This document shows positions 29,464 through 56,872 of a DNA stretch of 64,000 bases, one piece after another; within the stretch, counting starts at the first letter, position 1; every line of letters begins with the position of its first letter. The DNA lies in assembly GCA_965637545.1 (NCBI GenBank), contig OZ281494.1:2790001-2854000 (forward strand), read 5' to 3'. Below the pieces are notes generated by a model. The model saw nothing but the letters and a program-made list of their open reading frames with translations, did no database searches and was not told the origin of the DNA. Source of the stretch: Phallusia mammillata (Eukaryota). The position numbers were made by a program, and so were the translations under genes.

Positions 29464-32342
29464 TCAAAACCGATCGTATACAGAAGTTACCTTGCGGTTT
29501 ACGATGTTGCTAAAGAGGAATCCAGCAAACACAATGAACATCATGACAAGAAAGTTAAGATTCACTTTGCACGATCCGCTGGTTGTGGTATCTGGAAAAT
29601 AAGTTGTTACAGTGTTGTATGACATATGTGACCTCTAGTTTAAAATATATCTCATGTAATGTTTATCTGGGACAAACACCAAAACCGGAAAGCAAATAAA
29701 CGACTTTAGCGTTCACCTGTATCGTTGGGAAGATTTGAATTAGTTCGTAGACCACTGTTTTAATGAAAGTACTTTATCTCTTGCCAGAAAAAGCTTTACA
29801 GACAATTTTTTAACCAATTAAAAAACACGAAATTAAAGACTGTTTTACAATTTAAAATTCGAAAACTATAGCACGGTTACAGTTGAGCTAATGTAAACTT
29901 TTGCCAGGAAAAGCTTTACAATAAATATATTTTGACCAAATGATAGAACCGCAAAAAAATCAACACAAACTTATAGTTACCTGGTTTGTTAGTTGGAGCT
30001 GAAAAATAAACAACAGTGACAATAAAGCTTTGTTAATTCACAGCTATTTGAATCACACAATGTCCACTGTTTCTACCTATAAGGTCTCTTTGGTAAAGCT
30101 GGTAAGAAGAGATATAGGTGCGGAAACTGTGTGCGCTGTCTGCTGCTTATTATTAATTGGAATTACAAGACAAGATTTTTAAATTAATACAAATAAAGAG
30201 AAATAATGGCTAGTGGTTAGTGTAGCCAAGCATTGCCTCAGACCAGTGTATACTGTCTGCTGATTATCATTAGTTGGCTTGATGCCTTAAAGAGCAAGAG
30301 TTTTTGAATTAGAAGTAGAAAAAGCGTATTGACAAGTTACCTGGTGGATTGTCTGAGTTGCAATAATCTGGAAAATAAACAGTAAAACTTGTAAAACAAA
30401 AAGTATTTTTACATCAAGTTATTCACGAATACGATTTTAAATCGCAAAGCAAAATGTAATATTGACCGAACTTTGGCGCAATGTTTTTTTGCTCGTTGTT
30501 AAAAAGGCAATTTCGCAGAGTCGTTAAATTTAATTAACCTCTTTAGGTTTTACGACTTAGCCTACTTTCCCAAGATGTTCTTTTTATAAAAGGGTCTGCC
30601 CCATCTTATTACCTTTCGTGACTTTAGTGGTTTATAGCTGTACTTTGGATAAGTCAGACATTGAAACATAAAGCAAACTAGGCGTTTTGTGGATAAAAGA
30701 GCAATAATGATGTTATATTCCTATTGACTTTTAGGAGAAATAGTCATGAATCCGAAAAAAAAGATTGCATACAAAAAGCATTTGGGAAAAATTAATAAAA
30801 ATTTTTGAACATTTTTAATACGGTAATCAAAGTTAAAATTATATTACTAAACTTGTTTGAAAAAAGTTACCAGCGTCCCAATTTTGCATCAGCATAGCAA
30901 GTAATACACAAAAAGTGGTATTAAATACCGCATGTTACGCATGATACCGTGTAATGTACCTAGAATACCACATGGTGTGTGAAATGTGCGAAAAAAAAAC
31001 GACACGGTGAAATTAGGCCTGAAACCTTAATTCAATGACAAACCCTCACCACGTGTTTCTATTTTGTCCGTGACAATAGAAAAATGTTTACTGCGCAAAC
31101 GCTATTTAAAATACTAACTTTTTTTATTTTTCGCTGAGCTAGGAGCGCTTGCCGACCAGACTCGAACCTTCCAAATAAATAAGTCACTCACTTATGCGGA
31201 TTTAGTTATTTAAGCTTGGTTCAATACACCGTGTGGTTGACAAATACATCAGTAAAGTCTTGTTCTTTGTAGGGTAAATGCCCACTTACGCTGGATAAAT
31301 AGAGTGTAAGGCTACATAAAACCTAGCACGCCCCTAAAAGACAGCACAAAAGGAATGACAATTTACTGTCTTTGCAATGTTAGCTGTGTCTTCCACAAAA
31401 GCTACGTTCAATATACCATAATAAACCTAGCAAGCCCAGATAAAGATAGTTAACCAATTACTACCGACCCAAACGCAATGAATTATAATTTCCTTTATCT
31501 ACCAGATTTTTTTAAAAATACCTGCGGCATTAGTTTTCTATTTGTGTTGCTTTTGTGTTTCAAACAACCTTTTTTAAGAGACATTACTGCGGCAGTTCCC
31601 GTTAAAATATTGTTCAGAAAATTGTTTGATGCTGTTTTAAATGTGTGGAACATTTTCTCTTACCTGTGTCGCAATAATAGAAACACTCGATTCCATTTGT
31701 AACATCCTCACAACCAGAAACCGACCTCCCGCACCCCCTCCTAACATGATCGTATGTAACACCGTCAACTGAAAAACGATAGTTCTTTAGTGTTTTGTTT
31801 GTCACAGGTTTCTATTAAAAAGTGAAAATAGTATAAAAAAAACTAGTCTTCAACAAAAGTCATGTTGGATTAGAATTGAGATAACCACATCTGCCCGATT
31901 ACAAAAGCGCAAAAATATTTTAATAATATGAACATTAATTATGTTTTAATTAGGAATTTACAAAAATGCAAAAATACCTAAACACAAACCTGTGCCCGTG
32001 CTTATGGAGGTTGTACAGGAGTAGGTCGCAACAGGGCAATATTTGACATAAGATTGATCCGGGTTTGGACCTTTGCATGATGGGTCCCCCTCACCCGGTA
32101 CAGGTGGGTCATAAAAATGACAATCGTAACAATAGAGTGCTGAAGCTGCGGAATGAAAAGAAAGTATTTCTGATTTCTAAAGCTCTGGCTTAAACACAAT
32201 AAACATTATCCAGGCCACGATAATATAATGGATTTCATCCGACTTTAATAGGTGAATTTTTGAAAACTTTATCACATTTTTTTTACTTACCAACTGAGCT
32301 CAATACAAGCACTGCAAATGCTGATAGAAGCAGGTTCTTCAT
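29464..32342 (-). CDS. Ly6/uPAR three-finger protein L7, ~161 aa; exons 32342-32291, 32145-31990, 31768-31664, 30367-30341, 29998-29981, 29591-29464
   Basis: Signal exon MKNLLLSAFAVLVLSSV. 10-Cys LU domain CYDC...SCKG...YCP...SC...RGCG...GC...EC..YCDTDYCN. Micro-exons DYCNSDNPP and APTNKP. Hydrophobic terminal segment followed by NRKVTSVYDRF*. Confidence 0.85.
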
Positions 32343-34558
32343 GCTTCAATTTAGGATCTTAATTTTGTTACAAAACTTCAGTTTTGGTTGTTTATCTGCA
32401 GTGGTTGTAACAAACACAAACTAAAACAATGTATTTTCGATAGCGCTTACCGAACAAAAGCGAATAGTTTGAATAATTCTTTACTTAAGCATTTGTACTA
32501 AAATAACCCCAAAACAAATGATTTAATTGTTATAATTCTGTCATTTAATGGGTTTCGACTTCTGTTATGGACAAAAGAAAAATGATTTCTGCCCAAACGA
32601 TGTTTAAATCACAAAATTTTACCTCTTCCTACTGATGTAGCACTTACCAGCTCGACTCAAACCTTCCAAATAAATACGTCCCTTGACGATATGGAATCTT
32701 TATACTGTAGTAAGGCATTGAACGTTTACAGTGAGTCATGTGGCTAATACTACCTTGGATACCAAAAGGTGTTTTTGCTCAAAACATTTGCCTGGGCTGT
32801 AAAAGTGCCCAGTGTTGATCGACACTAAACACAAGCTTCTTTTGTTGCAAGGCGGTGGTTAGGTGGGAACAATAACTTACCTCATAAAAATCGGGCTTTA
32901 ACTGTTTTATGTTTAAACTGAAAAACACTGTAAAATGAACCACCATTTCAACTTACCATAATAAATCGACCATTAAAGGCTTGTCCTTAAAACAGTTAAA
33001 GTTTCGTTTATGGAGCGATAAAATGTATGAATAATATTTAAGTACAGTGACTAGTGGATGATAAATTATTTCTTTGCATATATATATAATTGATACATGT
33101 TTCGGCTAAATGGCACTATCGGTTCCAGAAAATACCAAAATAACGCACAATCATGTAAAGATTGGCGCTACACCAACCACGGTAAAACAAACGAAACTCG
33201 TAAAACAAAGGTGACTTAACATGGTAATTGAACGTAAAAATCAAAAAGGAGCACATGCTGGTCGATTACAATGGCGGCGGATTTCTGAGGGAAAATCCAC
33301 TAACACAAGAACTCACAGAAGACTAGTTTGCTAAATACCGATGGATGATGCTAAGAGCATTCGAGAATAATTGAAGTGCATTTTTTTGTAAAAATCCAAC
33401 GGTTAAAGCTATTAGGGTTGGTCTGAGGTTTCCTAATAATAATAATAATAAAATTAACCGCCCATTTACGCCGTCGACCAGTATTTAGCTACCTTTTTTT
33501 CTGTAAGGTCTAGTGCTAATACCTTTACCGTTTTACAAATACGACACAAACATATCTAGCAATGTCCGGCTTATATTTACGTACTTGCTTTGCAACAAAG
33601 CTGCTTTTTACTGTAGTCATTTTTTGCATAGCCCTAAACCACGCCAGCGTACAGCTATACAAAAATTACTATTTTAAAATTAGATTCGTAGTATAAGTTG
33701 ATGTGTGCACTCAAAAAGTGGTGTAACACTGCAAACCTTAATCCACCAAAGATTTACGTGAGAATCCATAACAAGTCACAACCTGTTTAAACCGGTACGA
33801 AAAAAATGTTACGACTTGCTGTTGGGCGTAAAAAACATCCTTTTTGACAAAATATCCTGTTTGATTCAATTTGCGCCATGAAATTATCGGTTATTTCTAA
33901 GCTGTCAGTTTATAAGAACAAAGCTAAAGCTATTTGCAACCTTTCATGAGCATTTTCTGCTCATAATTAACTTTTTTGCCTTCATTTTTGCCAAGTGTGA
34001 ATTGAACCTACTACAACGTCCTGCAGCAAATAGTAATTTGATTGTCCTTAACTGCAAACCATCACTACACATGGAAATATGGATTTCTAGTGTCCCACGT
34101 GTATGAAAAGACAATAAAGCTTTTTGCTTGCCCACAAAGTAATTAAATCGACAAAGAAAAAGAGAACTCTTCACATCAGTGTAGCTCAGAATAGGACATC
34201 ATAAGCATGATAACCATTTTCAAAATTGCCCCTGCGTTTCTACTTCTGTAGTTATTTTATTTAATTCTTTGTCAAACAGTACTCTGACGTACCCAACGTA
34301 TTAACGAATTGGCGCCAAAATATTGTGGCAAATTTATTGCGAGATTGAATTACATTTTGGCGTCGTCAATGGCAGATTAAAGCAGATGAAGTACCAAAGT
34401 TGTAGGAATCTAAATCACTGGTTGAAAGAGTATTTAAATTTGAAATCACAAAACGTTGAAATCACATCAGTACGGATTCTAAATTACAAAAATTTAATGA
34501 TCCAATTAAGTCAAATGACTATTTAAGATGATTTACAGCAGGAGACTTAGCCCTTAAC

Positions 34559-36084
34559 TTAAAACTTGATCAATATGAATCCAGAAAACAGAGACACCAA
34601 CATGATGAAAAAGTTGAAATGCACTTTGCCTGATCCGTTTGTTGTGTTACAATCATCTGAAAACCAAAAACAATTAAATTTAACGCAACCTATATTAACT
34701 CCTGGTCCGAAATATTTGTTGTCCCCTAAAGCCCTAATGCATTCAGCAAAGTTTTGACCTTTTATTGTCAATTACATTTTATATTTCAGCTCTTAGACAG
34801 CACAAACGGAATAGCAATTTACTGTATTTGCCTTGTTAGTAATGCAGTGTTAGCTTTCTCTTTCACAATAGCTGGTATCAGTATAAACTGTTTGGTTGAC
34901 AAATACACCAACCAAGTGTAACTCTCTGTTGCTTGAAAGGTCTTTTCCGCTGGATAAATAGAAGGTTAGGCTACATTAAACCTAGCACGCCCCTAAAAGA
35001 CAGCACAAAAGGAATGACAATTTACTGTCTTTGTAGTGTTAGCTGTCTCTTCCACAAAAGCTTGGTTCCATATACCATAATAAACCCAATAAATTACAAT
35101 TCCCTTCATCCACCGAATTTAAGGTATAAATCCAGCAACATTAGTTTTTTTGTGTGTGTTGATTTTGTTTTCAAAACTACTTACCTTAAGGTGCCGACAG
35201 TCAGTTTCTGCAGCAGAACCCACAAAAAGGCTGGTCACAACATTTTAGGTTGCTGTTTTACAAGTGTGGAACAGTTTCTCTCACCTGTGTCGCAGATATA
35301 GGTACACACGTTTGCAATTCCTATTTTCTCACAGCCAGAATCAGCTGGGTCTCCTCCGCACTGCCTTATTACGGCACGTGCTGTAACGCCTTCAGCTAAA
35401 AAGATGGTGTTTTTAAACGCTATGCTTTCACAGTTGCCATTAATAAGGAAGAAGTCAAAAACAACATATTTCAATCTTTATCACGATACTACTGATGTTT
35501 GGTTAGCATAACATGAAATTTTTTGATCACCATTTGTCTAAAAAAATGCTTACGGTTTGGGCTTTGAGGATTGGGCTAAGGTTTCATAATAATACACAAA
35601 AGTATACCTAAAAACCTTGGTTTTCAACGTTAAATTCAGCTCTTAACCCTAACTGGAAAATTATTTTATCATCTTGAAAATGGTTTATGATATACAATGT
35701 TAATTGCTTGCACAGAAAGCTTAACACTTACCGGAACCTGTGCTTGCTACAGTTGTACAGTAGTTAGCCCCAGGGCATTCTATAAGATGAGATGCATCCG
35801 GGTTTGGACCTTTGCATGACTGGTCCTCGAAACCCGGTACAGGTGGGTCAGAAAAACGGCAACTGTAACATCTGATGGCTGAAGCTGTGAATTAAAATAG
35901 AAGGCATTTTTCTAATTTCTTAAACTCTGGCTTAAACACGATAAACATTTCCAGGCTAATATAATTTAATGGATTTCATACAACTTAAATGGTTGAACTT
36001 TTGAAAACTTTATCACATATTTCCTCACTTACCAACTGAGCCGAATGCAAGTATTGCAAATGCTGACAGAATCAGGTTCTTCAT
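34559..36084 (-). CDS. Ly6/uPAR three-finger protein L6, intact, ~137 aa, GPI-anchor-type C-terminus; exons 36084-36033, 35884-35732, 35395-35285, 34656-34559
   Basis: All introns are phase 1 and GT-AG. IRCYSC...VCTYICDTDDCN, then TTNGSGKVHFNFFIMLVSLFSGFILIKF* (small residues followed by a hydrophobic tail). Confidence 0.9.
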
Positions 36085-38418: not shown

Positions 38419-38591
38419 CTTCGGGTATCCAGTGTTATGAATGCCACTTCTCAGAGCCTCATATACCGGACATTACCGAGTATAGCCTACTTGTGAGGGT
38501 CCAAACCCACATGCAAAACATCTCACAAACTGCTCTGCTAATTTCAAGTACTGTTTGACTTTTATTGTTTGATTTGTATTCTGGGTCTCTG
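38419..38591 (+). pseudogene. Orphan inverted Ly6 exon 2, frameshifted
   Basis: tttttag|CTTCGGGTATCCAGTGTTATGAATGC (SGIQCYEC...) continues after a frameshift as TCEGPNPHAKHLTNC..YC, with donor GTAAGT. It is on the opposite strand to the array. Confidence 0.8.
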
Positions 38592-39424
38592 GTAAGTGCC
38601 AGGTTATTTACGAGCATGTTGTAACACAAAAACCAAAGCTGATTGCGTCTTTTCACAACGTGGAGCATATGATTTATGTTTTTTCCATGAGTTCTGTCAC
38701 ATAACGCTTGGTAGTAAAGGTTTAATTAACATCCATCCACCAATTGTGCCTTGACATTTTCGCGCTTTGTAACATCTAAACCTAGCACATCTGTTTCCAG
38801 TTTGGTTAATATTTAGCACATTTATGATGCAACGTTTCTAGTATTGAAAGACCCCTAGCGCCCCGAGTGTACAAAACAGGTAAAAAAGATCCGTATTTTT
38901 TTTGCTTGTGCATAAATAAAATCTCCCAAATCGACAAAGAAAAAAGAGAATTCCTCACATCAGTGTAGCTCAGAACACGACATCACTAAGATGATGATGC
39001 CGATCATAAAAATGCTCCCTGCGTTTTGTCTTTTAAATTCGTTGAAAACATTCTTTGATGTATTTTGGTAATCATAACTCTGACGTAATTATTCTAACGA
39101 CAAATTGACTCCAAAATATTTATTGCCAGATTTATTTACATATTGGTGTCATCAGTAACAGATTTAAGAACCAAATGTGCTAAAGTTATTAGATTCTAAA
39201 TCACAGTTTGAAGGAGTATTCAAATTGCAAAACGTTGACATCGCATCAGCCTGGAATCTAAATCACAAAAATTTAATGATCCAATTAAGTCAAATATGAC
39301 TATTCTTCTTTTTTACATTCTATTGTCTGCGGGAGATTCCTTAGGTGACAAAAGTTTTCCAGCTGACTATTTAAAGTTATTTGCAGTAGCGATCATCCCT
39401 GAATTCAAAACTTTCATACTAAAT

Positions 39425-41181
39425 TTAATACTTTGGTATGAACCCAGTAAACAAAGACACCAACATGACGATAAAGTTGAAATGTACTTTGCCTGATCCG
39501 TTGCTTGTGTTACAATCATCTGAAATCCAAAAACAAATAACATTTTAGCTCAACCTATGTCAACTCCTGGTCCGAAATAAATGTTGTCCCTTAAAGACCT
39601 GACTCACTCAGCAAACGTTCGGCCTTTTACAGTCTTTAACAGTTTTTCTGCGCCTGGACAGCACAAAAGGAATGACATTTTACTGTCTTTGCCTTATTAG
39701 TAATGTAATGTTAGCTTTCTCTTTCACAGTGGCTTGTTTCATTAAACCGTTTGGTTGAAATATACATTAACCAAGTTTTACTCTCTTTAGCGAGAAAGCT
39801 CACTTACACTGGATAAAAAGAACCTTAGGCTACATTAAACCTGGGACGCCCCATAAAGATAGTTAGCTAATTATATTACCAACACAAACGCAATGAATAA
39901 TAATTCCCTTTATTACACGAAGTTAAGGATTAAATCCTGCAGTATTATTTTTTTGTGTTGCTCTTGTATTCAAAACAACCCAACTTAAGGTACAGACAGT
40001 ATGTTACTGCAGAAGATTCCATGAAAGACTGTTCAGCAAAAAGCAAAAAGGTTGGTCAAAACATTTTAGGTTGCTGTTTTAAATATGTGAAATATTTTCT
40101 CTTACCTGTATCGCAGACATAGGTGTAGAATTCAAGCATAGTTGCTAATTCTACCTTTCAGTCTCTCGACTGGCAGAATAAGAGCGGTCAGTTTCACATG
40201 CACTTTATTGAAATGAAGAGTGATTTAAAACGATTTTCGACCACCTAAACCAAATAGAATAAAGAACGTAATAACTACAAATAGTCAAAACAATCTTACT
40301 TGCAGCACATAAAGTATGTACCATAACATAACTTAATAAGCTCACAACTAACTCATACACTACTGTAACACTAACTGGACTGCACGTGCAGACACAAAGA
40401 AAACTGTTAAAGTGGGACACAGACAAGGTCAGCAGTTTTGACGTAACAATGCATGTATGGTGTGATGATTGCAACGGCGGGAAAAGTTTTTGTTGTAGGG
40501 GAGCGTTACTGTCCGTTACAATAGGTACACACATTTGCACCTGCTATGTTAACACAACCAGAATCAGCTGGATCACCCCCGCATCTCCTTGCAACAACAC
40601 TTGTCTTAACACCGCCAGCTGAAAAACAATAGTGCTTTTATTGTTTCGCTTGTGACACGTTTGTTTTCAAAAGAAGAAATAAGTAAAAAAAAACGTATTT
40701 TAGTCTTAAACAAAAAATCATGTTGGATTAGAGTTAAAATAAGCACATCTTCTGTCCGATTACAAATAGACAAAAATATTTTAACGACATGAACATAAAA
40801 ATGTGGTATGGTTGAGGATTTTAAATATTGCACAAACAGCTAAACACATAGCGGTGGCCGTGCTTACAACCGTCGAACAGTAGTTGATCCCCGCAGGACA
40901 ATCTAAACGTTGGGATAAAGCCGGCTTTGGACCTTTGCATGATTGCTCGCCCGCACCCGGTACAGGTGGTTCAGTAAAAGTGCAACTGTAACATCTGATG
41001 GCTGAAGCTGTAAGATGAAGTTGGCTTAAACACAATAAACTTCTTCTCGGCCACAATAATTTAATGGATATCATCCGACTTGGATGGTTAAATTTAAAAA
41101 AAAACTTTGTCACATATTTCTTCACTTACCAACTGAGCCAAATGCAAGCACTGCAAATGCTGACAGAATCAGGTTCTTCAT
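39425..41181 (-). pseudogene. Ly6 gene L5, disrupted
   Basis: Exon 1 41181-41130 and exon 2 41007-40852, whose donor is mutated GT>CT. Exon 3 is split by a solo LTR (40124-40520). Terminal exon 39519-39425 is open. Confidence 0.88.
40124..40520 (-). mobile_element. Solo LTR (397 bp) inserted in exon 3 of L5
   Basis: TG...CA ends, 5-bp TSD atagg (40119-40123 and 40521-40525), and AATAAA on the minus strand near 40205. Removing it restores ACCTAT-GTCTGCGATACAG|GTAAG. Confidence 0.88.
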
Positions 41182-44727: not shown

Positions 44728-45691
44728 TTACAGCTTGCTGACGAGGAATCCAGCAAACAAAGTCACCAACATGATAAGAAGGTTGAAATGCACTTTGCCT
44801 GATCCGTTGGTTGTGTTGCAGCCATCTAGAAACAAAAAAAAATTAGCGCAACGTATGTCAACTTTTTGTCACTTCAAATACGTAAAATATTTTCTCTTAC
44901 CTGTGTCGCAGACATAGGTACACACATTTGCAATATCTACATTCTGACAAGCAGCATTAGCTGGGTCTCCTCCGCACGTTCTTATAACGGCAGTTGCTGT
45001 AACGCCGCCAGCTAAAAACGGTAGTGTTATTAAAAGTGCTGCTTGTGTCAGGTTTGTTTCAAAACAAAAGAAAAAAACATATTTCATTCCTAAACGACTG
45101 ACAGTTGGTGAGAAAAGGCATCATGAAAATGGCAGTACACCAGGCCTATTGCGGGCGCAATACTGAATCAGCCGGTCACCAAGCATTCACTGCCATATGG
45201 CAAGGAGTGGCTAGACAAATCTATCATGTGGTGGAATTCGAACCCACGACAGGAGTCTTTCCGGGACTAAGTTCATTTTATGTTCATCTTATGATCAAAA
45301 TAATTTATGATTTTAAATGTTAATTACTTGCACAGAAAGCTAAAGACATACCAGATACTGTGCTTACAACCGTCGAACAGTAGTTTATCCCAGTTTGGCA
45401 ATCTATAAGATGAGTTGCATCCGGGTTTGGACCTTTGCATGTCTGGTCACTCACACCCGTTACATGTGGCTCAGTAAAAGTGCAATCGTAACACCTGATT
45501 GCCGAAGCTGTAAAATAATGTAGAAAGCATTTCTGAGTCTGGAAGTTCTGACTAAAACACAACAAACATCTTCCGGACTAGTTTAATCAATTTGATTTGG
45601 GCGATATAATTTTGGTAAACTTTATCATACTCCACTTACCAAATGTGACAAATACAAGCACTGCAAATGCTGACAGAACCAGGTTATTCAT
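44728..45691 (-). CDS. Ly6/uPAR three-finger protein L4, intact, ~138 aa, GPI-type; exons 45691-45640, 45507-45352, 45011-44901, 44825-44728
   Basis: Open spliced frame. IRCYDC...VCTYVCDTDGCN followed by TTNGSGKVHFNLLIMLVTLFAGFLVSKL*. Confidence 0.9.
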
Positions 45692-46029
45692 GTTTAATTT
45701 AAAGTTTTATCTTTGCTAGGAAGCTTACGCTTTGTTTGTTTTTCCTGCACATGTAAGAAAAGGGAAATACAGCAAACAGAGTCAGAATAATGTGATTACT
45801 GCGCAAAACCGTCTAAATCATAAACATTTCTCTCTTAGAAGCGTTAACCTGTCCAACTCAAAACCACAAAACAAGTCTCTCGAAAATATGGATTTTTGTA
45901 GTGAGTCAGTGCAGGTAACAACCCACTTTTCTGCCTCAGTTCAACATTACTACTTTGGTTCAGAAAATACGTTTTTGCTCAAAATTTTTGCTTGGGCAGC
46001 AACATTTTTAAATTCCCCCTGTTAACCGA

Positions 46030-47972
46030 CACTAAATACTACCTTCTGGTCCGCTGGTTGTGGTAACTGGAAAATAAGTAACAAAGTTGCAGCTCTTGTG
46101 ACCTCCAGTTTAAAACGTCTGTCTGTTGGAATGTGTATTTGCTTTACAAGTATTTAAACCGCAAATTAAACACACGACATTTTATTGTTGAGTCTGAAAA
46201 AGATTTGTTGAAAATAAGTTTATGTTTATTTCCCAAATGTAAAAACTGCAAAACTAAACATGGACTTTATGATATACCTGGATTGGTGGTTGGGTTGAGA
46301 TATACCTGGACGTCTGGAAAACAAACATGAAAATTGTTACAGGAGAGCCTTTAAGTAAATACTGTATTGTTTTTTAGCTGCACTGCCTGAGTTGCAACTA
46401 TCTGAAAAGCACAAAACAACACTATTAGCAGATATATTTTTACACATAAAGTGTTTCCCCCATTTTATCACACCTTTATTGATTTACCAAGAAAAGTTAC
46501 GACAAAAATGTGCAAAGCGTTAAGTCAGGCCGGAAATCAATTCTTTTTTTGAAATCGATGTAGGCCTACCAACACGACCCCAATAGCCAAGTACGACTTG
46601 CAACTGTGGTTTGCCGAGGAGTAAAAGTTAGATACGTTTGATTACACATATGCAATTTATGTACAATGTTTTATTCTCACCTGTGTTGCAAACCATAGTG
46701 CATGTACTTCTACCTACGGTGTTAAAACAACCAGTAATACCTGGAAAAACCCCACATGTCTTTGCAGCAGTTGTTGCAGTAACGCCGTCAGCTGAAAAGC
46801 AACAACATTCAAAGTTTAGTCTTTAAAAGAATAAGTCCCCGAGAGTGTCCTGGGTTCGAACCCCGTGAAAAAATAAAGATAAAATGGAAAAGACAGATTT
46901 TTTTATGAACCTTTTGCCTACTGTAGACAACTAGTGCACTACGACAAGCTTAAACAAAATGTTTGATTATATTTATCACCACATTTGACACCATCACAAT
47001 TTTTTTTAATTGGGTATTTGGTCTTTTACTACAGGGTCGATAATCGGTTTAACCCAAACACGTATACGGCCTTTATCCACTTTTCACGGACCCTTACAAA
47101 AATATTAGGAAGATAAAGGGATATCAAGAACGTAAAAAAGAAATTAGAACTATTGTGCAACCTAGAGATATGCCACTACCCTATAATGATGGCGTCTTGC
47201 ATGACGCAACGTCGATTATTTATAATAAACTGCTGGATGAGCAATTCTCGGTTATACAATATGCCTGGCAGCAATAGCTTATTCAGAACACTTGTGGCTA
47301 GAATGTTTGCCGGTTTGGGGCTTAGATACTCTTTAACGTCAGGTACGCGATAGTTTAAAGTTTGTTAAGCAGTCAGGTGAAATACAATAGATTGGACCTA
47401 AAGTGATAGGCCTAGCACTAAATTATTTTCATAATATAACATATTGTACCTACAACACATTTAGTTTCAGATAGGGAAGTTAATTACTTAAAAGAGCAGA
47501 CAATTATGGTTTAAGATTTTATGTGTTTATTACTTGCACAGAAGGCTAAACACATACCGGTTACGGTGGTAGTTATGGTCGTACAGTAGTTGTCCCCAGG
47601 ACAATCAATAAGATGAGTTTCAGCCGGGTTTGGACCTCTGCATGTTGGTTCTCCTGTAGTAGGTTGAGGTGGATCAGTAAAAGTGCACATGTAACATCTG
47701 ATTCCAGAAGCTGAAAAAGTATGATTTTGTGGTTATGTTTTTCAACTGATATAATTTTGAGTTATAAAAGATTGATTTTTCCATCAAGTTAGCATTTTCA
47801 GACAAAGGTACAACTGCAAACCTTATCTGATTAGTTTAATGTTTAATGTTAAGAACAACATGATTCGTTTGCTGTTGGTTAACTTTTAATCATTGGGAAA
47901 ATCGCTGTACCTGCACTTACCCGTTGATCCAAACGAAAGCACTGCCAAAAGTAATAACCTCAAGTTGTCCAT
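46030..47972 (-). CDS. Ly6 gene L3: exons 47972-47921, 47710-47558 and 46791-46681 intact; 3' exons aberrant and GPI tail missing
   Basis: The LU domain is completed by the DSCN micro-exon starting at 46401, but its expected GT donor is absent. The terminal-type exon near 46066 reads VTTTSGPEGSI* without a hydrophobic tail. It could be a secreted form or a pseudogene. Confidence 0.55.
46835..46873 (+). mobile_element. 5'-truncated copy of the tRNA-Leu-derived SINE in L3 intron 2
   Basis: gtccccgagagtgtcctgggttcgaaccccgtgaaaaaa with imperfect TSD aaagaataa/aaagataa. The empty site is present in the paralogous intron at ~50540-50570. Confidence 0.8.
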
Positions 47973-48234
47973 GTTTCACTTTAAAGTCCTATTTTTTGTA
48001 AAACCTGGATTTTTTTTAATAAATGTAAATGAAAGTAAGTAAAAATTTTCTTGATACTGATTTGCAGCCCAGCAAGCTGTAAAAAACGCATTTTTTTCAT
48101 ATTATGCTGCCGGATAAGAAAAAGTAATCAAATACTCTTTAAAATTTAATTCAAGCATAACTTGACTTATTCAGTAAAACTGTTATTCAACACTGCAAAC
48201 TTTATCGTTGAAATCTTACGGGCGGCAACATACC

Positions 48235-49790
48235 TGTGATGTATGTATTTACCGCTAGATGTCGTCCCTGAGTTATGACGTCACGTTTCGTATATAACCG
48301 TGTACCGCGTCTTAAACGTGGCAGTCAATACAGGTAACCGCTTAAAGGTGTGTGCGTTCATGACATGGTGTCAGAAGTGGTTTTTCAAATAAAATGGGAG
48401 GTTCGTTCTCACTGCCGGAAGCTATGCAATGGAGTGACAATGTGTCACAAAACTGGGTTAAGTTTATTAGGGGATTTAGGCTTTATTTGACAGCTGTTGG
48501 TTATGACGGAAAGGCTGCAAAAGTTAAAACATCTATGTTGCTCCACGTGTTGGGAGAGCAAGGTCAAACCATCCACTCAACATTTAAATTTGAAGAAGGA
48601 CAAGAAATGCACTTTGAAACTGTAGTCAATGCCTTCGAAAGCTACTGTTGTCCGAGGAAGAATATCACCAGCGAGCGATACAGTTTTTTTTCTAGAAATC
48701 AAAATGATGGTGAAAGAATAGATGTTTTTATAACCGATTTAAAAAACTGTCTAAAAGCTGTGATTTCGGTGATCTTTGCGACTCATTAATCCGAGACAAA
48801 ATTATTATTGGTATCAAGTGTGATCAACTTCGTCAAAGTTTGCTGCGGGAAGAGGAACTAACGCTTGAAAAAGCTATTAAAATGTGCATAACAAACGAAA
48901 CAGTAAGATCGCAAATGACAATGTTTCGATCAACAAATTCTACAAGTTTTAGCTTGGATGCTGTTCAACGCGAACCACGTGGTAATCAATTACCAGCGCC
49001 TCGAGTTTGCAGATTCTGTGCCTTGCGACATGACGTCAGAGCGTGTCCTGCCTGGGGAAGGCGATGCTTGAAGTGTCGTGGAAGAAACCACTTCGCTCGA
49101 TGTTGCAGTGCAGCTAATCACCCGCAAGCGCAACGCGCGGATACAATTCAGACGTACAACATGCACTCTGTAAGTACTACTAGTTCACAAAAAGATTGGC
49201 TTGTTGACGTGCACTTCGTTTTAAGATAGATACGGGAGCCCAAGTAAATATTTTGTCACGAAATGATTTTCAAAAACTTCAGGGACGTCCATATGTTTCT
49301 TCTACTAATATTCGATTGATCTCATATACTGGCCACCATATTCCAGTTTGTGGGACAGTTAGTACTTCAATACAGAGAGCAACCATTTACTCTACCATTT
49401 GTTGTTGTGTAGATTAATGCATTGCCTATTATAGGATTAAATGGACCAGTAACTCTTGGCCTAATAAATAAACTGGAACCGATTGTCAGTGACGAACAAA
49501 ATTTGCTGTCCAGCTTTTCAGATTTATTTCAAGGGTTGGGTTGTGTTCCAGGTTGTCACCGAATAAAGACCGATAGCAGAGTTTGTCCCGTAGTCCGTCC
49601 CAGCAGAAAAATTCCATTTGCACTCAAAAACAAACTACAACAGGAGCTACAAAGAATGGAAAGCATGCAAGTAATCAAAAGAATAGAAGAACCAACTAAG
49701 TGGGTGAACTCTCTTGTAATAGTAGAAAAGAAAAACGGAAAACTAACAGTTTGCTTAGATCCGCGAGATTTAAATAAAGCAATTTTGCGT
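48235..49790 (+). mobile_element. Ty3/Gypsy LTR retrotransposon (Mag-like), 3'-truncated and decayed
   Basis: 131-bp LTR TGTGAT...ATGACA (48235-48365), then PBS TGGTGTCAGAAGTGG (complementary to the tRNA-Leu 3' end). Gag has a stop and two Zn knuckles (CRFCALRH..CP; CLKCRGRNHFARCC). Protease KIDTGAQVN is frameshifted. RT starts ...CLDPRDLNKAILR and then breaks. No 3' LTR. Confidence 0.92.
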
Positions 49791-49995
49791 GTAATTAAAT
49801 TGTTGCAGTTCAAACCCTGTGAGGTCTAGTTTAAAAAATGTTGGTTTGAATATATGTCTCGTGGGTAGGATTTGAATTGCCTAAAAAACATAAAGCTGCC
49901 ACAGGGAAATTATTGTTACCTCTGGGCAGAAAAATGTTTGCAATAAATAAAACTTTTATGAGAATTGCAAAATTAGACACGGACTTTATAGTTAC

Positions 49996-52097
49996 CTGGT
50001 CCGTTAGTTGGATCGGGACTGTCTGGAAAACAAACATTAAAATTATTACAGGAAAGTCTTGTTAAGTAATTAGCGTATTTGTTTCACGTGTTCCACTCCC
50101 TGAGTTGCAACAATCTGAAAAGCACAAAAATATCAGCACAAATTTTTTGACCTATAAACGTTTCCCCCACATTTACCACACGTTAAAAATTAACAAAGAA
50201 AAGTTACAACTAAAATGTGTCAAAGCATAAAGTCAGGCCCGAATCAACTGTTTTGTTTTAATTGAATTTCGAACTCGACCCGAAGAGCCTAGTCCGACTA
50301 AAAAATTTGGTTTGCTGAAGAGTACAAGTTAGACAAGTTTGATTACACAGATAAAATTGCGTAAATTACAGCTCTTAAAATGCGCACAACGTCTTTTCTC
50401 ACCTGTGTTGCAGACCACAGTACACGTATTTCCATCTGCGGTGTTGACACAACCAGCAGTATCTGGAAAACCTCCACATGTCCTTGTAACAGATGTTGCC
50501 GTAACGCCAGCGGCTGAAAAGCAACAACATTCTGAGTTTTTTTTTCGTTTAGGAGAATAAAATCGAAAAGACAGATTTTAATTACTCTTTTGCCTACTGC
50601 AGAAACTACAACAAGCCTTAACGAAGTGTACAGTTCCTTTTGCTACCACCTTTGACACCAACACAATTATATTCGTTGTTAATGAGGTCTTTTACTACGG
50701 TTCGGCAACGGTTTTAAAACTGAAATTTTATCGCGGTTCGACCTTTAAATAGCAGCAAAGGTGTAGCAATAAAAATTTATATTTGAACATGGCAACACGG
50801 ACTGCTACAAAAAGCATTCAAGCTGAAAAAGTATACGGCCTTTACCTACTACTTACGGGCACTCACAAAACTATTAGGAGGATAAAAAAGGTTATTAAGA
50901 ACGTAGCAAAAGAATTTAAAATTTTATTCACGCAAATAAGTTGTCGTTGTTGTCTCAGTCTGTTTTAGCAGTCAGGTAAAGTAGTAACAGCACAAACTTA
51001 AAGAGATAGTACCAAATGATATAAATCGTATAGCATATTGTACCGAGATGTGATTTGAAAATAGGATATTAATTACTTAACAGAACACACTATTCATTAA
51101 AAGCGATGATATGGGTTAAGATTGTGTGTGTTAATTACGTACAAGCAAACACATACCGGTTACAGTGGTAGTAACGGCCGTACAATAGTTGATGCCAGGA
51201 CAATCAATAAGATGAGTTGCAACCGGGTTTGGACCACTACATGTTGGTTCTCCTATCCCCGGTTGTGGAAAGTCCGTAAAACTGCACATGTAACATCTGA
51301 TTCCTGGAGCTGAAAAATCATGATGTTGTGTTACTGGAAAGTGAAGGAAAAGTATGAATAGTATTTAAACAAACAGATGTTTGTGACAAAATTAAACCAG
51401 TAAACCATCTCAAACTTTCTTAAAGCGATCCAAAATTTTGTTTCGCGTTAACTTTTAATCATTTTTGTTTTGTTTAGCGTAAATATTTAAAAACTTACCA
51501 GTTGAGCCAAACGAAAGCACTGCCAAAACTAATAAACTTGTAGCGATTGCGACATAACTTGTGCAAACTTTGCAATAGTTGTTTACCAAAATAGCTCGTT
51601 TTTGACTCGCTAGCTCAAAGCTTGCGAGGAAGTTAAATTGTGTAGCACCAAATTCAACTCTATTGACAAATCGTGTTCGGGCTTTGTAATATTTCCTGTC
51701 GCAGTTAATTAGGATGCAGATGCGACTTTGTGATGTGGTGTTTACAAGCTTTTGCCGTATGTTTTATCTCGTGCTGTGATTGGATGCTGCTTTGTGTGGG
51801 AATTGTGCAAGAGCCAATCGCAAGAGCACATGTGTACGATTCAACGCCTTTTTCCGGGGTATATATAAAACCGCACTCGTTCATTTCGATCTCTTGCCTC
51901 TCTTTCTGTCTCTTCTCCTGCAATAAACAAACGAACCAAAGTGCAAGACACGTGTGTGGAGTTTCTAGGACTCTGTCCTGACAAGCCCAGGAGCTTGGGA
52001 GGTTAAGGACGGTGGTATACCTCTTTAATTTGTAGTGACTCGGTCTTTAGCTTGTACCGAGACACCTTATTTAACACTACAAACTAAAGTTGTCCAT
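49996..52097 (-). pseudogene. Ly6 gene L2, disrupted
   Basis: The signal exon is split by a solo LTR (52097-52082 + 51538-51499). Exons 51309-51157 and 50513-50403 and micro-exons 50114-50088 (DCCNSGSGT) and 50022-49996 (DSPDPTNGP) are open. The terminal exon is lost at the Gypsy breakpoint. Confidence 0.88.
51539..52081 (+). mobile_element. Solo LTR (543 bp) in the signal-peptide exon of L2
   Basis: TGTAGCG...CACTACA ends and 4-bp TSD aact (51535-51538 and 52082-52085). CCAAT, TATATAAA and AATAAA occur in order on the + strand. Confidence 0.9.
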
Positions 52098-52852
52098 GTT
52101 TCCCTTTTAAACCCTAATGTTTGTAAAATCTAAAATTTGTTTTTGCAGTGAATGTAAATCAAGTTTTTATTTCTTGTAACATTTCTAAAAAAATCCTCTC
52201 AAATTTGTTCACTAGAAAAAAATTCTGTTTCTTTAGCATGTCTCGGCTTGTAAATGGTTATTTGCTTTAAACTTCTCCAAGAAACATATCGCTTAAAAAT
52301 CCAAAGCGAGTGATAAATATATGAAATCACTTTTGATCAGCTGTTTAAATCACACACGTCCTGCAGAAGAGATCGTTACATTAAGTCTGCGTAAACCGAT
52401 TTCCTTAGTTGGCAGGTACACTCCAAAGGCTTTTTTAGTAAAATGTGACAACGTCCGCCTTTATCAAGAAATTTATTGGAACTGATTTGCAGCCCAAGCT
52501 GGAAAAGAATTCCAATTAACTTTAATATCTTGTCGTCGCACTATAGAAATCAATTAAGTGCTCTTTGAAATTGCATTTATAGCATGACTTGACCTATGCA
52601 GTAAAACTGTAATTCAACAATGTAAACCTTATTTGGTTGAAAGCTCACGTAAGGGCGACAACAGGCCTAAGCCTGTTCAGACAAGTTTGAAAACTGGAAA
52701 ATAGCAAATTGCGTATGTAACAAAAATGCGCTGCACCGATGCCAACATGAAGTCACTCTAGCGCCTCACGTGTTTGAAATATCAGTTTGTTTATTTTAAT
52801 AATTCCAATTGCAAAATATTTATGAGTCTTTCACAAAAAACTATCGTTGCTT

Positions 52853-55259
52853 TTAAAATTCTCTGAAAGCAAATCCAGCAAACAGAGTCATTATCATCAA
52901 AAGAAGGTTGAGATTTACTTTGCCTGAACCACTGGTTGTGGTAACAATCTCTGTGGTACTATCTGAAAACAAACTTCAAAGTTGTTAATCTTGTAAACGT
53001 TTGACCAAAAAAAACTAGATTAAATGTTCTCGAAGAAACTTCACAACCCTAGAATAAGACATATCTTTTAAGGTTTACCTGGTTCTTCGGTCTGAGTTGG
53101 TTTATCTAGAAAACAATTGAAGTTTGAAATGTTACTGAGCAATCTTTTGACCCATGGAAAGAACTGCATAAATTGTTAAAATAAATAATTGTGACGCATT
53201 TTTAGAAAAGTAAGATATCGCGTAAATAGCGTCACAACGTACATGAAAATACAATGACATCACAACATGCTAAAAATATTGAGGAAACAGGTTTGCGTCC
53301 TTGATGAAAAACGTTAGAGTTGAAACCTGTTTCGTATTAGCTTTTCTACCAATTTAGGTATTTTTACGTGCCTTTCAATTTAAGTGTTGGAATGACAATG
53401 TACCTTACAAAATAGTTAAAAGTTAATGAAATATTTACCTGGTAAGCTGGTTGTGTTGAGTTCATCTAAAAAAACACCTAACGTTAAAACCGTTTACTCA
53501 AGCATTCAAACCTGTATAAAGTGGTCGCCTGGTTCTTTCAAATATGCGCTTACCGTTAAATATGGGAGCTGAACAGAAATTTGTTACAAGGAAATTGTGT
53601 TCTTATATTTGTTTTTAACCGGACAACGCAAGCGATTTAAAAAATGTTGTCTAACATTGACAACTTAAAGGCCAGTTTGAAACCCTGGCCAAAGTTGACA
53701 AACTGGTATCATTACTAAACCAAGTCCGTAAAAATAGCTGTTAGATGGTGCCACAGGAAAAAGTTTAAAAACAACACGTTTTTGCTCATAGTCAGAAAAA
53801 GAGTATAAACATTTTTGAATGATACAACTAACTTTTATAACGTTACCTAGTGTGTGAAATGTGTTGCATCCATCTAAAAAACAAAAAATTAAACTTCAAA
53901 GTTAGCGAAACGCTGACATTCAATAAAAATTTAACTGTGGACATGTGTATCCTTATCTTTTGTTAGCGTGAAACCTTTGGTACAACATGGGGTCGCAAGT
54001 TCTAACAGAGGCGTCTTTGCTTTTGGACTAATTATTTAAGGTTTGAAATTTTGGACATATTCCAGTAAGCTTTTAGCTGCGGTTTGTACAAATGTGATGT
54101 TGAAATGGGGTGTAACACCGCTGGAAAACGCAAACGATTCACGTAAAATCCCAACACAAATAGAAATAAAACATAAAAGCGGTACTGCCCTATGAATAGT
54201 TCGTTTCCCGCGTCGGTGGTTTGAGAACAAATACTGTTCACAAAAAATCACAAACAACAATCAATGAGAATTAAAGCACTCAATTATTTATGAGTAACAA
54301 GAATTTTGAAACGTAGTTCTGAAACATGTGTTCACCACAGTATTGAATTGTGGTTGTTTTTTCCTCACCTGTTTTGCAGACGTTTGAGCAAAGATTCACA
54401 TTTGTTATTTTGAAGCAACCACGAGCAAGTGCAACCCCACAAGATCTTGCAAAAACTGTAACTAAATCTACAAACAAAATGCACAGTTTTCTTTATTTGA
54501 TTAAAAAAGGCCAGATCTATATATATAGTTAACTTATTCTTTACTTTTTCTATTTATTTTGTGTGTGTTTACAATTACAAATTTGGAGACAATTTTGACA
54601 AAAGTCGGCTCGTTCCGATTAGAACACGATTCTTCGTTACTGTTGAAAAACGAAAGTGATTGACGACAGCTTCTGTTTATTGGAATAGAGTTACCTTGGC
54701 TTTAGGCATAATAAAAAATACGGGAATGATTACCTACCAGCTCATAAGCTGGTACAACACGCTTTAGTAGCAAATATAAACCTGGCGTTGGTTAGTTTTA
54801 CAATGTCGTTTTTTTACGAGGCTATAATAGCTATAAAAGGCTATAAACAGACGTACTTGGCACCTCGACACCTACGGTCGTACAATAGTCTACATCAGGA
54901 CAATCTGTAAGATGTGTTTCATCCCAATTTGTTCCCAGGCATGAGTAATCCATAGAATTACAACTGTAACATCTGATGCCTGAAGCTGCAAAAGTTTGAT
55001 TTTTACTTGGTCTTGTTTGTCAATTGTCGATGACACAAACAACAATTTTGTATAAATTGTATATGTCCGAAGATAGCGTTTTGGCAAATGTAGAAATTAT
55101 ACAACAAATAGCGACTTACAGATTGGCCGTTAAAGAACGACAAGTTTTTTAGTTACATTTTTCAGTTATTTTTAACAATATTTATGTAGTTTAAAAATTA
55201 TACTTACTGATTGTACCAAATGCCAACCAGAAAAATGCAGGCAAAATAAACTGATGCAT
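52853..55259 (-). CDS. Ly6/uPAR three-finger protein L1, intact, ~156 aa, with stalk and GPI-type tail; exons 55259-55208, 54985-54857, 54467-54369, 53873-53847, 53465-53439, 53105-53079, 52962-52853
   Basis: Signal MHQFILPAFFWLAFGTI, 10-Cys LU domain, three 27-nt micro-exons (DGCNTFHTL, DELNTTSLP, DKPTQTEEP) and tail ...TTTSGSGKVNLNLLLMIMTLFAGFAFREF*. All introns are phase 1, GT-AG. Confidence 0.88.
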
Positions 55260-56500: not shown

Positions 56501-56872
56501 CTCTCGCACCAATCCTTGAAAGTCACTATAACGAAAACCATTAACCCAATCCTAATAATTGAGCATCATCGCATGACCAAGCCGCAGTTCTTGAACTATG
56601 CAATCCGTTCTCTAGCGCCTCTTGCGTTTTTTCAAATGGCTTTTCACTGAAGAGACTTTATTTATAACATGTTTTTCCTGGGTGTCCGGTTCCTGAAGAC
56701 AAGCTTAAAGCCCCGACAACTAAAACAAATTAAATTTTTCAGCACACAGGAAAGTATGAGGAGTTTTGATGTGACCTAGTGGGGCATGAGTATGAATGGT
56801 CGTGGGTACTTTCCTCGAGCTCCTCTTGTGGTCATTCGTACAGTCAAAAAAGCTACTTCATTATTAGACACA

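What the first reader, a model, noticed from the sequence alone, without database searches (positions are those of the whole stretch)
29981..53873. Stalk micro-exons appear to be born from the first 27 nt of the terminal exon through a latent GC donor
Seen: L4 and L6 have no micro-exons, and their terminal exon begins AT GGC/GAT TGY AAC ACA ACM AAC GGA TCA G|GCAAAG, a GC-type donor-like sequence at exactly +27. L1, L2 and L7 have 27-nt (one 18-nt) phase-1/phase-1 exons of clearly related sequence (AT GAA CTC AAC ACA ACC AGC TTA CCA G|GTAAAT; AC AGT CCC GAT CCA ACT AAC GGA CCA G|GTAACT). The first micro-exon carries the domain's last Cys-Asn and later ones encode Thr/Pro-rich spacers. Inference: duplicating intron plus terminal exon and one C>T change creates a new frame-preserving module, tuning the height of the domain above the membrane. 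Symmetric phase also permits alternative skipping.
Basis: partly seen in the sequence, partly recalled or inferred. Interest (0 to 1): 0.75.

Follow-up and report, generated by a model that had tools for sequence, protein, structure and literature searches.

The report
Duplicated tiny stalk exons in Ly6 genes
In a row of seven sea-squirt genes for small lipid-anchored Ly6-type surface proteins, the spacer between the folded domain and the membrane anchor is built from 18-36-base exon candidates that are diverged copies of the start of the last exon. This is a clear case of a known process (small tandem duplication that adds exons), but no transcript confirms it yet.

Summary
The minus strand carries seven tandem Ly6/uPAR-type genes. 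L4, L5 and L6 start their last exon with a 27-nt unit (Asp-x-Cys-Asn-Thr-Thr-Asn-Gly-Ser) followed by GCAAAG. L1, L2, L3 and L7 carry 18-36-nt phase-1/phase-1 exon candidates with strong acceptors and GT donors.

- **Homology of units:** the tiny exons match the 27-nt unit in register far better than decoys do.
- **Relics:** L1b and the L1 last exon keep decayed Cys-Asn codons. L7t and L3c lack exactly the 6 nt that hold the Cys codon.
- **Acceptor flanks:** the L1a and L1 last-exon flanks share 18 nt, and L1a sits behind the same intron end as L4t.
- **Donors:** none of the 8 micro-exon donors has G at +5, against 19 of 20 constitutive donors as computed.

Several points stay open. No RNA contig covers the locus. 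Most flanking introns show no homology. L2, L3 and L5 are defective. L7 is a mosaic. A Clavelina relative already has internal Cys-Asn-plus-linker exons, so gain versus loss and the C-to-T step remain inferred.

The scan noted duplicated micro-exon rows in other genes of this genome, but not this case.

The parts
52853..55259 (-). L1, an intact gene of 157 codons. Exons: 55259-55208, 54985-54857, 54467-54369, micro-exons a/b/c, last exon 52962-52853.
   Evidence: open frame, all introns phase 1, 10 Cys only if L1a is included; the exon-2 peptide hits Pfam QVR (E 6e-4, below cut-off).
53847..53873 (-). L1a, a 27-nt micro-exon carrying the last Cys-Asn of the domain. It sits behind the ancestral intron-3 acceptor.
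   Evidence: L1 53891-53860 aligns with L4 44845-44812 (85% over 34 nt, E 4e-6).
53439..53465 (-). L1b, a 27-nt spacer micro-exon. It is the best copy of the 27-nt unit, with the Cys codon changed to Leu.
   Evidence: 18-19 of 27 bases. family D2 (22 nt, 73%, to the L1 last exon across the donor); p 0.005-0.024 against all five last exons.
53079..53105 (-). L1c, a 27-nt spacer micro-exon candidate and the most diverged one.
   Evidence: family D1 (64% to L1b over 39 nt); only 12 of 27 to the unit.
52924..52950 (-). Relic 27-nt unit inside the L1 last exon, with frame-shifted Asp-Cys-Asn codons. The present acceptor lies 12 nt upstream of the old one (CAG at 52953-52951).
   Evidence: L1 52953-52872 aligns with L6 34659-34578 and L5 39522-39441, starting on their acceptor CAG; alignment.
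49996..50114 (-). L2a (50114-50088, or ending at 50097) and L2b (50022-49996), in a defective gene.
   Evidence: no in-frame ATG. L2b matches the last-exon boundary at 15-16 of 22 bases. L2b plus 85 nt downstream aligns with L7b plus its downstream flank.
46043..46401 (-). L3a (46401-46384), L3b (46313-46278) and L3c (46066-46043). L3c is the orthologue of the start of the L7 last exon. L3 has no in-frame GPI tail.
   Evidence: L3 46181-46050 aligns with L7 29707-29575 (E 4e-13)..
44728..44825 (-). L4 last exon. The 27-nt unit is 44825-44799, then GCAAAG at 44798-44793, then the hydrophobic tail. Intron 3 is only 75 nt.
39425..39519 (-). L5 last exon, of the same type. The gene is a pseudogene.
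   Evidence: the exon-2 donor reads CT at 40851-40850, and a 396-nt insertion with a 6-nt target duplication splits exon 3.
34559..34656 (-). L6 last exon. The 27-nt unit is 34656-34630, with GCAAAG at 34629-34624.
30341..30367 (-). L7a, a 27-nt micro-exon with Cys-Asn. It is needed for the tenth Cys.
29981..29998 (-). L7b, an 18-nt spacer micro-exon and the orthologue of L2b/L3b.
   Evidence: 20 of 22 bases to L2b. family D8: the 14 nt upstream are shared with L7a.
29464..29591 (-). L7 last exon. It starts 6 nt short of the unit (no Cys codon) and has GCAAAG at +21. The tail is lengthened because the usual stop is out of frame.
   Evidence: L4 44815-44735 aligns with L7 29587-29507 (81%).

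Best explanation
The locus is a tandem family of single-domain Ly6/uPAR (three-finger) proteins with a signal peptide and a GPI-type tail.

The peptide between the last Cys-Asn of the domain and the likely GPI attachment site (Gly-Ser-Gly) is encoded by a repeatable unit. The unit is about 27 nt, starts AT, ends CAG, and has phase 1 on both sides.
- In L4-L6 a single unit is fused to the GPI-signal exon.
- In L1 and L7 (intact genes) and in L2 and L3 (defective genes), extra units stand as separate tiny exons.

The extra units arose by small tandem duplications that copied the acceptor end of the intron together with the start of the last exon. The upstream copy then needed a donor at the unit's end. 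That donor is CAG|GTAA.. where the last exon has CAG|GCAAAG, or, in L2a/L3a, the GT of the next Val codon.

The surplus Cys codon of each downstream copy was then disabled: by substitution in L1b, by a frame shift in the L1 last exon, and by a 6-nt deletion in L7t/L3c. The copies then drifted into Thr/Pro/Asn-rich spacer.

The outcome is a stalk of about 4 residues (L4-L6), about 17 (L7) or about 36 (L1).

Shown here: the sequences, splice signals, phases, unit homology and relic codons. Inferred: that the spacer exons are spliced in, the direction (gain rather than loss), the C-to-T step, and any effect on function.
For: - **Gene models:** open frames, phase 1 throughout, and strong acceptors.
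- **Need for the first micro-exon:** L1a and L7a supply the tenth Cys, so they must be used.
- **Unit homology:**. L1b and L2b are the best non-terminal matches to the last-exon boundary (15-16 of 22 bases, top 1% of 703 decoys).
- **Alignment past the donor:** the L1b alignment to L4t runs about 20 nt beyond the donor (31 of 42 columns).
- **Repeat family:** L1a, L1b and L1c form a repeat family at 408- and 360-nt spacing.
- **Shared acceptor flanks:** L1a with the L1 last exon (18 nt, 89%; p 0.013; z 2.9). L1a with L4t/L6t.
- **Relic unit** in the L1 last exon.
- **Donor type:** G at +5 in 19 of 20 constitutive donors as computed. The odd one is a coordinate I set one base off; read correctly it is GTAAGA, giving 20 of 20. 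Micro-exon donors have G at +5 in 0 of 8 (Fisher 3e-6). This fits descent from a non-consensus progenitor such as GCAAAG.
- **Outgroup:** the last LU domain of a Clavelina lepadiformis relative has Cys-Asn fused to the GPI-signal exon, like L4-L6.
- **Known mechanism:** tandem genomic duplication with use of latent splice sites is a published route to added coding sequence (PMC3443670).
Against: - No RNA contig lies on any exon of L1/L2 (share 0.00) or of L7/L6.
- No significant similarity between the 90 nt after each donor and the GPI-signal coding part.
- No flank homology for L1b or L1c, and none between the intron bodies.
- L1c, L2a and L7b are not individually significant.
- GCAAAG also codes Gly-Lys in the last exons of the micro-exon genes, at +39 and +21. 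It lacks the +5 G that GC donors usually need (general knowledge).
- The micro-exon layout with its flanking introns is shared by L2/L3 and L7, while L7's exons 1-3 and introns 1-3 belong with L4-L6. L4-L6 could therefore have lost the modules.
- Clavelina has internal 51-54-nt Cys-Asn-plus-linker exons ending CCAG|GT.
Confidence: 0.5

Rival explanations
1. Loss, not birth. The ancestor of the array already had a Cys-Asn micro-exon, spacer exon(s) and a last exon that began with a unit. L4-L6 collapsed the row by unequal, in-register recombination (or deletion) between the first unit and the unit of the last exon. That regenerated one hybrid 27-nt unit followed by GCAAAG. On this view the 'latent donor at +27' is a by-product.
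For: - L4t equals the first 14 nt of L1a joined to the L1 last exon from its 23rd base, with a 4-nt overlap.
- The a/b/terminal layout and its intron flanks are shared by L2/L3 and L7.
- L7 nests within the L4-L6 clade for exons 2+3 (85/85 and 85/90 support) and for introns 1-3.
- Internal Cys-Asn-linker exons are old in the wider ascidian family.
Against: - The tail tree puts L7 outside (L4,(L5,L6)) (90/92). L7 may therefore be a head/tail chimera, which removes the need for loss.
- The outgroup's terminal LU domain has Cys-Asn fused to the GPI exon.
- The relic Cys-Asn codons in L1b and in the L1 last exon still require duplication of a Cys-Asn-bearing unit.
- No relic units are found in the introns of L4-L6.
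Confidence: 0.3
2. Only the first, Cys-Asn-bearing micro-exon is a real exon. The spacer candidates (L1b, L1c, L7b, L2b, L3b) are unspliced relics of duplications that happen to keep splice-like edges.
For: - There is no transcript evidence.
- Their donors all lack +5 G.
- By my own estimate from the 391 pyrimidine-rich acceptors in the window, about one symmetric, open 'micro-exon' is expected by chance in a 1.4-kb intron.
- Skipping them keeps the frame.
Against: - All have pyrimidine tracts as strong as the constitutive exons and end in CAG|GTAA.
- They keep an open phase-1 frame in both intact genes.
- L2b, L3b and L7b are kept at the same position in three paralogues.
- Their codons are of one compositional kind (Thr/Pro/Asn).
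Confidence: 0.15
3. Domain loss. L1 and L7 descend from multi-LU genes like those of Clavelina. The tiny exons are the surviving inter-domain linker exons after the LU exons between them were deleted.
For: The Clavelina genes have three LU modules. Each is followed by a small phase-1/1 Cys-Asn-plus-linker exon ending in Pro-Gly codons. L1 has three Cys-Asn-derived units.
Against: - No relic of LU exon 2 or 3 is found in any tail intron (tblastn E >= 0.5; blastn).
- The spacer units are closer to the last exon's start than to the first micro-exon.
Confidence: 0.05

Closest known systems
Typical Ly6/uPAR gene (human and mouse)
   Same: Small secreted or GPI-anchored three-finger protein. The signal peptide is on the first coding exon, the LU domain is split by a phase-1 intron, and the GPI signal is on the last exon (PMC4839075). 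The genes lie in tandem clusters.
   Different: Here an extra phase-1 intron cuts three codons before the last Cys-Asn. In four of the seven copies, one to three further tiny exons lie before the GPI-signal exon. The typical mammalian gene has only three coding exons.
Multi-LU GPI proteins of Clavelina lepadiformis (XP_076817801.1 and XP_076817962.1; uPAR-like repeats)
   Same: The exon logic is the same. Each LU is a large exon, then an exon ending ..TGCAA(T/C)ACAG, then an exon starting ATGG(A/C)TGCAA. All introns are phase 1. The last exon has Cys-Asn, small residues and a hydrophobic tail. Exon-2 peptides are 31-39% identical.
   Different: There the small exons (51-54 nt) link successive LU domains. 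Here they lie in a row after a single LU domain and encode only stalk.
Tandem genomic duplication with latent splice-site use ('imprecise' intron gain, or exon duplication)
   Same: A short tandem duplication across a splice-like AG|G site creates a new intron and adds coding sequence (PMC3443670, PMC4974935). The duplicated exons keep their length and phase.
   Different: Here the copied piece spans an acceptor plus the first 27 nt of a terminal exon, so a terminal-exon start would become an internal exon. The required donor is not a ready AGGT but AGGC, or a nearby GT.
Schistosome micro-exon genes (MEGs)
   Same: Secreted or surface proteins with rows of short symmetric exons that could be mixed by skipping (bioRxiv 10.1101/2023.06.21.545858).
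   Different: In MEGs most of the coding sequence is micro-exons. Here only the stalk is, the folded domain has normal exons, and no alternative splicing is shown.

Membership tests
Ly6/uPAR (LU, three-finger) domain proteins | Match to a curated LU-domain profile | tested here: inconclusive
   Exon-2 peptides alone hit Pfam QVR (PF17064), positions 1-40 of 86, at E 6e-4 to 8e-3 and 18-21 bits against a cut-off of 27.3. Exon-3 peptides give nothing. The joined domain was not searched because it has no reference. The Clavelina homologue P0004 passes the cut-off (61 bits).
Ly6/uPAR (LU, three-finger) domain proteins | 8-10 Cys in the LU pattern, ending in Cys-Asn | tested here: met
   The mature parts of L1, L4, L6 and L7 have 10 Cys with a C-terminal Cys-Asn. 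The exon-2 Cys positions are invariant in all seven copies.
GPI-anchored protein | N-terminal signal peptide, and a C-terminal signal made of small residues, a short polar spacer and a hydrophobic tail of about 15-20 residues | tested here: inconclusive
   The translations show a hydrophobic exon 1 and tails of the form Gly-Ser-Gly-Lys-Val-x-(Phe/Leu)-Asn followed by 14-18 hydrophobic residues. No GPI predictor was available. L7 has a lengthened tail (also noted in s1-408749).
Tandem exon duplication | Neighbouring exons of equal length and phase with significant sequence similarity | tested here: met
   L1a, L1b and L1c are 27 nt each, phase 1/1, and form a repeat family at 64-72% over 39 nt. 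The units rank above decoys.
Tandem exon duplication | Homology extends into the flanking introns | tested here: inconclusive
   Present for L1a and the L1 last exon and for the 14 nt upstream of L7a and L7b. Absent for L1b and L1c and for all intron bodies.
GC-AG intron / latent GC donor | The GC dinucleotide is used as a 5' splice site in transcripts, usually within a near-perfect consensus (G at +5) | not testable with these tools
   No RNA covers L4 or L6. The site reads CAG|GCAAAG, with A at +5.
Schistosome-type micro-exon gene | Most of the coding sequence lies in symmetric micro-exons between a signal-peptide exon and a last exon | tested here: not met
   Micro-exons make up 81 of 471 coding nt in L1 and 45 of 486 in L7.

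The most novel reading that the evidence does not exclude
The boundary between the mature protein and the cleaved GPI signal (CAG|GC) acts as a standing proto-donor. The stalk would then be an exon-intron repeat array that still expands and contracts by unequal recombination among paralogues. Its symmetric modules would be skipped in a regulated way, giving one gene several stalk lengths.
Probability: 0.12. Interest if true: 0.6.

Novelty: new variant of a known kind. Interest (0 to 1): 0.35.

Why it matters
If confirmed by cDNA, this would be a compact, datable example of how part of a terminal exon can turn into internal, frame-neutral modules. It would also show how a family of surface receptors varies the length and glycosylation of its tether without touching the binding domain.

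It gives concrete primers and expectations for a simple RT-PCR test. It adds no new principle: tandem duplication with latent splice-site use is already described. The functional pay-off of linker length in Ly6 proteins is doubtful according to published simulations (PMC9819746).

Tried and rejected
- **RNA evidence:** the run search on 49850-55300 found only two probable DNA holders, and the RNA-guess runs had share 0.00. Laying four RNA-guess runs from four studies on 29460-35440 put no contig on any exon. This is no proof of silence, since the runs are small.
- **Word search:** the search with the L5 exon-2 reading frame was blank.
- **Profile search:** the big search with the exon-2 alignment gave three hits. 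Two are Clavelina multi-LU proteins and one is an unrelated mussel thrombospondin-repeat protein. No closer relative, and no annotated product of this locus, is on record.
- **Relic of the GPI signal:** my visual impression that the intron after L1b continues the GPI-signal coding sequence did not pass the 90-nt test. It is only marginal in a gapped alignment.
- **Intron-body duplication:** rejected.
- **Domain-loss relics:** rejected.
- **In-frame GPI tail for L3:** a search over all acceptors found none.
- I replaced it with coordinates read from the ruler.
- **Joined models:** joined (spliced) protein models were translated only inside scripts, from window coordinates, for reading. None was sent to a family scan, homology search, exact-protein look-up or fold. 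There is therefore no full-domain Pfam score, no structure model and no GPI prediction.
- **The repeat finder:** it needs plus-strand regions (searches failed and were repeated).


Full report
**What is there**

The finding lies on the minus strand. Reading 29-56 kb shows seven head-to-tail genes. I mapped them with blastn using the L6 exons and built models from coordinates. Each gene has:
- a 52-nt signal-peptide exon;
- a 129-156-nt exon and a 99-111-nt exon that together encode most of a ten-cysteine domain;
- a last exon encoding small residues (Gly-Ser-Gly-Lys) and a hydrophobic tail.

All introns are phase 1. Exon-2 peptides alone hit the Pfam Quiver u-PAR/Ly-6-like model over its first half (E 6e-4 to 8e-3, below cut-off because only half a domain was given). 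The Cys positions are invariant in all copies. These are single-domain Ly6/uPAR-type proteins, very probably GPI-anchored.

Other notes of this scan call the genome a sea squirt, Phallusia mammillata. I did not verify the species.

**State of the copies**
- L1, L4, L6 and L7 are intact.
- L2 has its ATG out of frame, with no in-frame Met upstream. Its hydrophobic last exon is replaced by a 50-nt open stretch, followed by about 1.5 kb of foreign sequence.
- L3 has the start of a last exon (L3c) and a tail relic about 260 nt further on. No acceptor gives an in-frame tail.
- L5 has a mutated exon-2 donor and a 396-nt insertion with a 6-nt target duplication in exon 3.

**The observation**

- L4, L5 and L6 begin the last exon with 27 nt encoding Asp-x-Cys-Asn-Thr-Thr-Asn-Gly-Ser, followed by GCAAAG.
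- L1 has three 27-nt candidates.
- L2 has two. The first is 27 or 18 nt, depending on which weak donor is used.
- L3 has three (18 or 39 nt, 36 nt, 24 nt).
- L7 has a 27-nt and an 18-nt candidate.

All have pyrimidine tracts as good as those of the large exons, an AG, a GT donor, and phase 1 on both sides. The first one in each gene carries the tenth Cys and the Asn, so in L1 and L7 it must be used for the domain to be complete. The later ones encode Thr/Pro/Asn-rich peptides. The stalk between Cys-Asn and Gly-Ser-Gly is about 4 residues in L4-L6, about 17 in L7 and about 36 in L1.

**Is the similarity more than chance?**
- Against 401 AG-N27-GT decoys from both strands, L1a, L1b, L2a, L2b and L7a match the L4/L5/L6 unit at 16-19 of 27 positions. 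They are the top of the distribution. L1c is weak at 12 of 27.
- A weight matrix built from ten units ranks three units that were left out (L3c, L3a, L7b) above the 99.99th percentile of all 128,000 positions.
- A 22-nt comparison anchored on the 3' boundary (16 exon bases plus 6 beyond) gives 15-16 of 22 for L1b and L2b against the last exons. That is within the top 1% of 703 decoys ending AG|G(T/C), and that top 1% is mostly the last exons themselves.
- The repeat finder independently groups L1a, L1b and L1c (39 nt, 64-72%, spacing 408 and 360 nt). It also pairs L1b with the L1 last exon across the donor (22 nt, 73%).

**Signs that a Cys-Asn-bearing unit was duplicated**
- L1b keeps the Asn-Thr-Thr codons, but its Cys codon now reads Leu.
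- BLAST aligns the L1 last exon to L5 and L6 starting on an internal CAG (52953-52951) that matches their acceptor. The 27 nt after it (52950-52924) hold a frame-shifted relic of the Asp-Cys-Asn codons. Today's acceptor lies 12 nt upstream.
- L7t and L3c equal the L4 unit minus exactly the 6 nt that hold the Cys codon.

A surplus unpaired Cys would be harmful after a duplication. Three different ways of removing it is what the duplication model predicts.

**Flanks**
- L1a and 18 nt upstream of it align with L4t and its upstream flank (85% over 34 nt, E 4e-6). The first micro-exon therefore sits behind the ancestral intron-3 acceptor.
- The flank upstream of the L1 last exon shares 18 nt (89%) with the flank upstream of L1a (p 0.013 against pyrimidine-rich decoy acceptors; z 2.9).
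- L7a and L7b share the 14 nt before the acceptor and the donor GTAACT.
- L1b and L1c have no detectable flank homology.
- The intron bodies between micro-exons are unrelated.
- The 90 nt after each donor do not resemble the GPI-signal coding part.
- A gapped alignment of L1b to L4t does run about 20 nt beyond the donor (31 of 42 columns), but it is only marginally significant.

**Donors**

As computed, 19 of 20 constitutive donors of the seven genes have G at +5. The odd one is a coordinate I set one base off; read correctly it is GTAAGA, which makes 20 of 20. None of the eight micro-exon donors has G at +5. They read GTAAAT, GTAAAC, GTAACG, GTAACT (three times), GTGAAA and GTATAT (Fisher 3e-6).

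This fits descent from one non-consensus progenitor, and GCAAAG with C changed to T would be such a site. It fits equally well the weak donors typical of regulated small exons.

In L3a, and less clearly in L2a, the exon ends inside the Gly codon that holds the GC. The donor corresponds to the GT of the following Val codon, after a 2-nt loss (12 of 12 matches with one gap). The GC-to-GT step therefore cannot be the general rule.

**Direction**
- Exons 2+3 give (L1,(L2,L3)) against a clade of L4, L5, L6 and L7, with L7 nested inside (85/85 and 85/90).
- Introns 1-3 agree. L5/L6/L7 are 69-75% identical over 500-800 nt.
- L7b with 85 nt of downstream intron matches L2b (E 3e-7). The start of L7's last exon with 115 nt of upstream intron matches L3c (E 4e-13).
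- The tail tree puts L7 with L1, outside (L4,(L5,L6)) (90/92).

Two readings fit. Either the modular tail is older than the L4-L7 clade and L4-L6 lost it, or L7 is a head/tail chimera. A single in-register recombination between the first unit and the unit of the last exon would recreate exactly 27 nt before GCAAAG.

Another scan note reports gene-conversion mosaics in a different Ly6 array of this genome (s1-353695). The window alone cannot decide between these readings.

**Outgroup**

The word search found nothing. The profile search of 1.8 billion representatives with the exon-2 alignment found only two real relatives. Both are three-domain GPI proteins of Clavelina lepadiformis.

I mapped one of their genes exon by exon in L001, with these results:
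- All introns are phase 1.
- Each domain is a 135-141-nt exon plus a 108-120-nt exon. The second and third of these end ..ACAG, like exon 3 here.
- The first two domains are followed by a small internal exon (54 and 51 nt) that starts with the Gly-Cys-Asn codons and encodes the linker to the next domain.
- The last domain has Cys-Asn, small residues and the hydrophobic tail in a single terminal exon.

Both states, an internal Cys-Asn-plus-linker exon and a Cys-Asn-plus-GPI last exon, are therefore old in ascidians. The existence of old internal linker exons, one of them ending CCAG|GTAAAG, means the first micro-exon need not have been born in this array.

**Mechanism and function**

The best-supported account is serial small tandem duplication of a piece made of the intron's acceptor end plus the unit. 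The upstream copy was recruited as an internal exon through a donor at or near the unit's end, the surplus Cys was removed, and the copy drifted to spacer. This is the published 'tandem genomic duplication with latent splice sites' route (PMC3443670, PMC4974935).

That the modules tune height above the membrane is a guess. Human Ly6 proteins have linkers of 0-24 residues, and simulations found only a weak relation between linker length and position (R = 0.45; PMC9819746). Added N- and O-glycosylation sites (Asn-Thr-Thr, Thr/Pro runs) are an equally plausible effect. Alternative skipping is allowed by the phases but is untested.

**Limits**
- No spliced (joined) protein was given to any search, look-up or fold tool. 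Searches were exon by exon, by reference. The joined translations were made from window coordinates only, for reading.
- The retroelement at 56.7-60.2 kb was only observed.

**Verdict**

The structure is real and the units are homologous. The birth story is plausible but unproven, within a known class of event. Interest is modest.

Noticed in passing
window 40851-40850 and 40520-40125 (minus strand): L5 is a pseudogene. Its exon-2 donor reads CT instead of GT. Exon 3 is split by a 396-nt insertion flanked by a 6-nt direct repeat (40526-40521 and 40124-40119), probably a small transposon.
   Followed up: partly
window about 48300-49790 (plus-strand ORFs 48394-49829): About 1.5 kb of foreign sequence sits where the hydrophobic last exon of L2 should be. 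It has three 129-135-aa open frames on the plus strand with no Pfam hit. The intron that precedes the last exon in L3 and L7 is still recognisable just before it.
   Followed up: partly
window 29500-29475 versus 30350-30325 (minus strand): The extension of the L7 last exon ends ..CGCAAG|GTAACT. It is 77% identical over 26 nt to the 3' end of L7a plus its donor and intron start. The L7 tail may have picked up a micro-exon/intron junction, or it has a further donor.
   Followed up: no
window 29175-29063 (minus strand): An orphan exon-3-like fragment ('L8') lies just downstream of L7, with GC instead of GT at the donor position (..GACGCAG|GCAAGA). No other L8 exons were found.
   Followed up: partly
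window 31678-31664 versus 30367-30353 (minus strand): The last 15 nt of L7 exon 3 and the first 15 nt of L7a are 87% identical (both encode x-Tyr-Cys-Asp/Asn-Thr/Ser). The Cys-Asn unit may itself be an old copy of the end of exon 3.
   Followed up: no
window 56779-60168 (minus strand): Retroelement fragment: open frames with RT-RNase H, a weak gag-aspartyl protease hit and DUF7041. Observed only.
   Followed up: partly
L001 22190-22215: In a neighbouring Clavelina LU gene, a second copy of the unit's start (ATGGATGCAAC) lies in the intron 8 nt before the acceptor of a Cys-Asn-linker exon. Small duplications at this boundary therefore also occur in another ascidian.
   Followed up: no
window 44826-44900 (minus strand): Intron 3 of L4 is only 75 nt, against 590-1300 nt in L5-L7. 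It consists of the two ends of the longer introns, that is, an internal deletion.
   Followed up: partly
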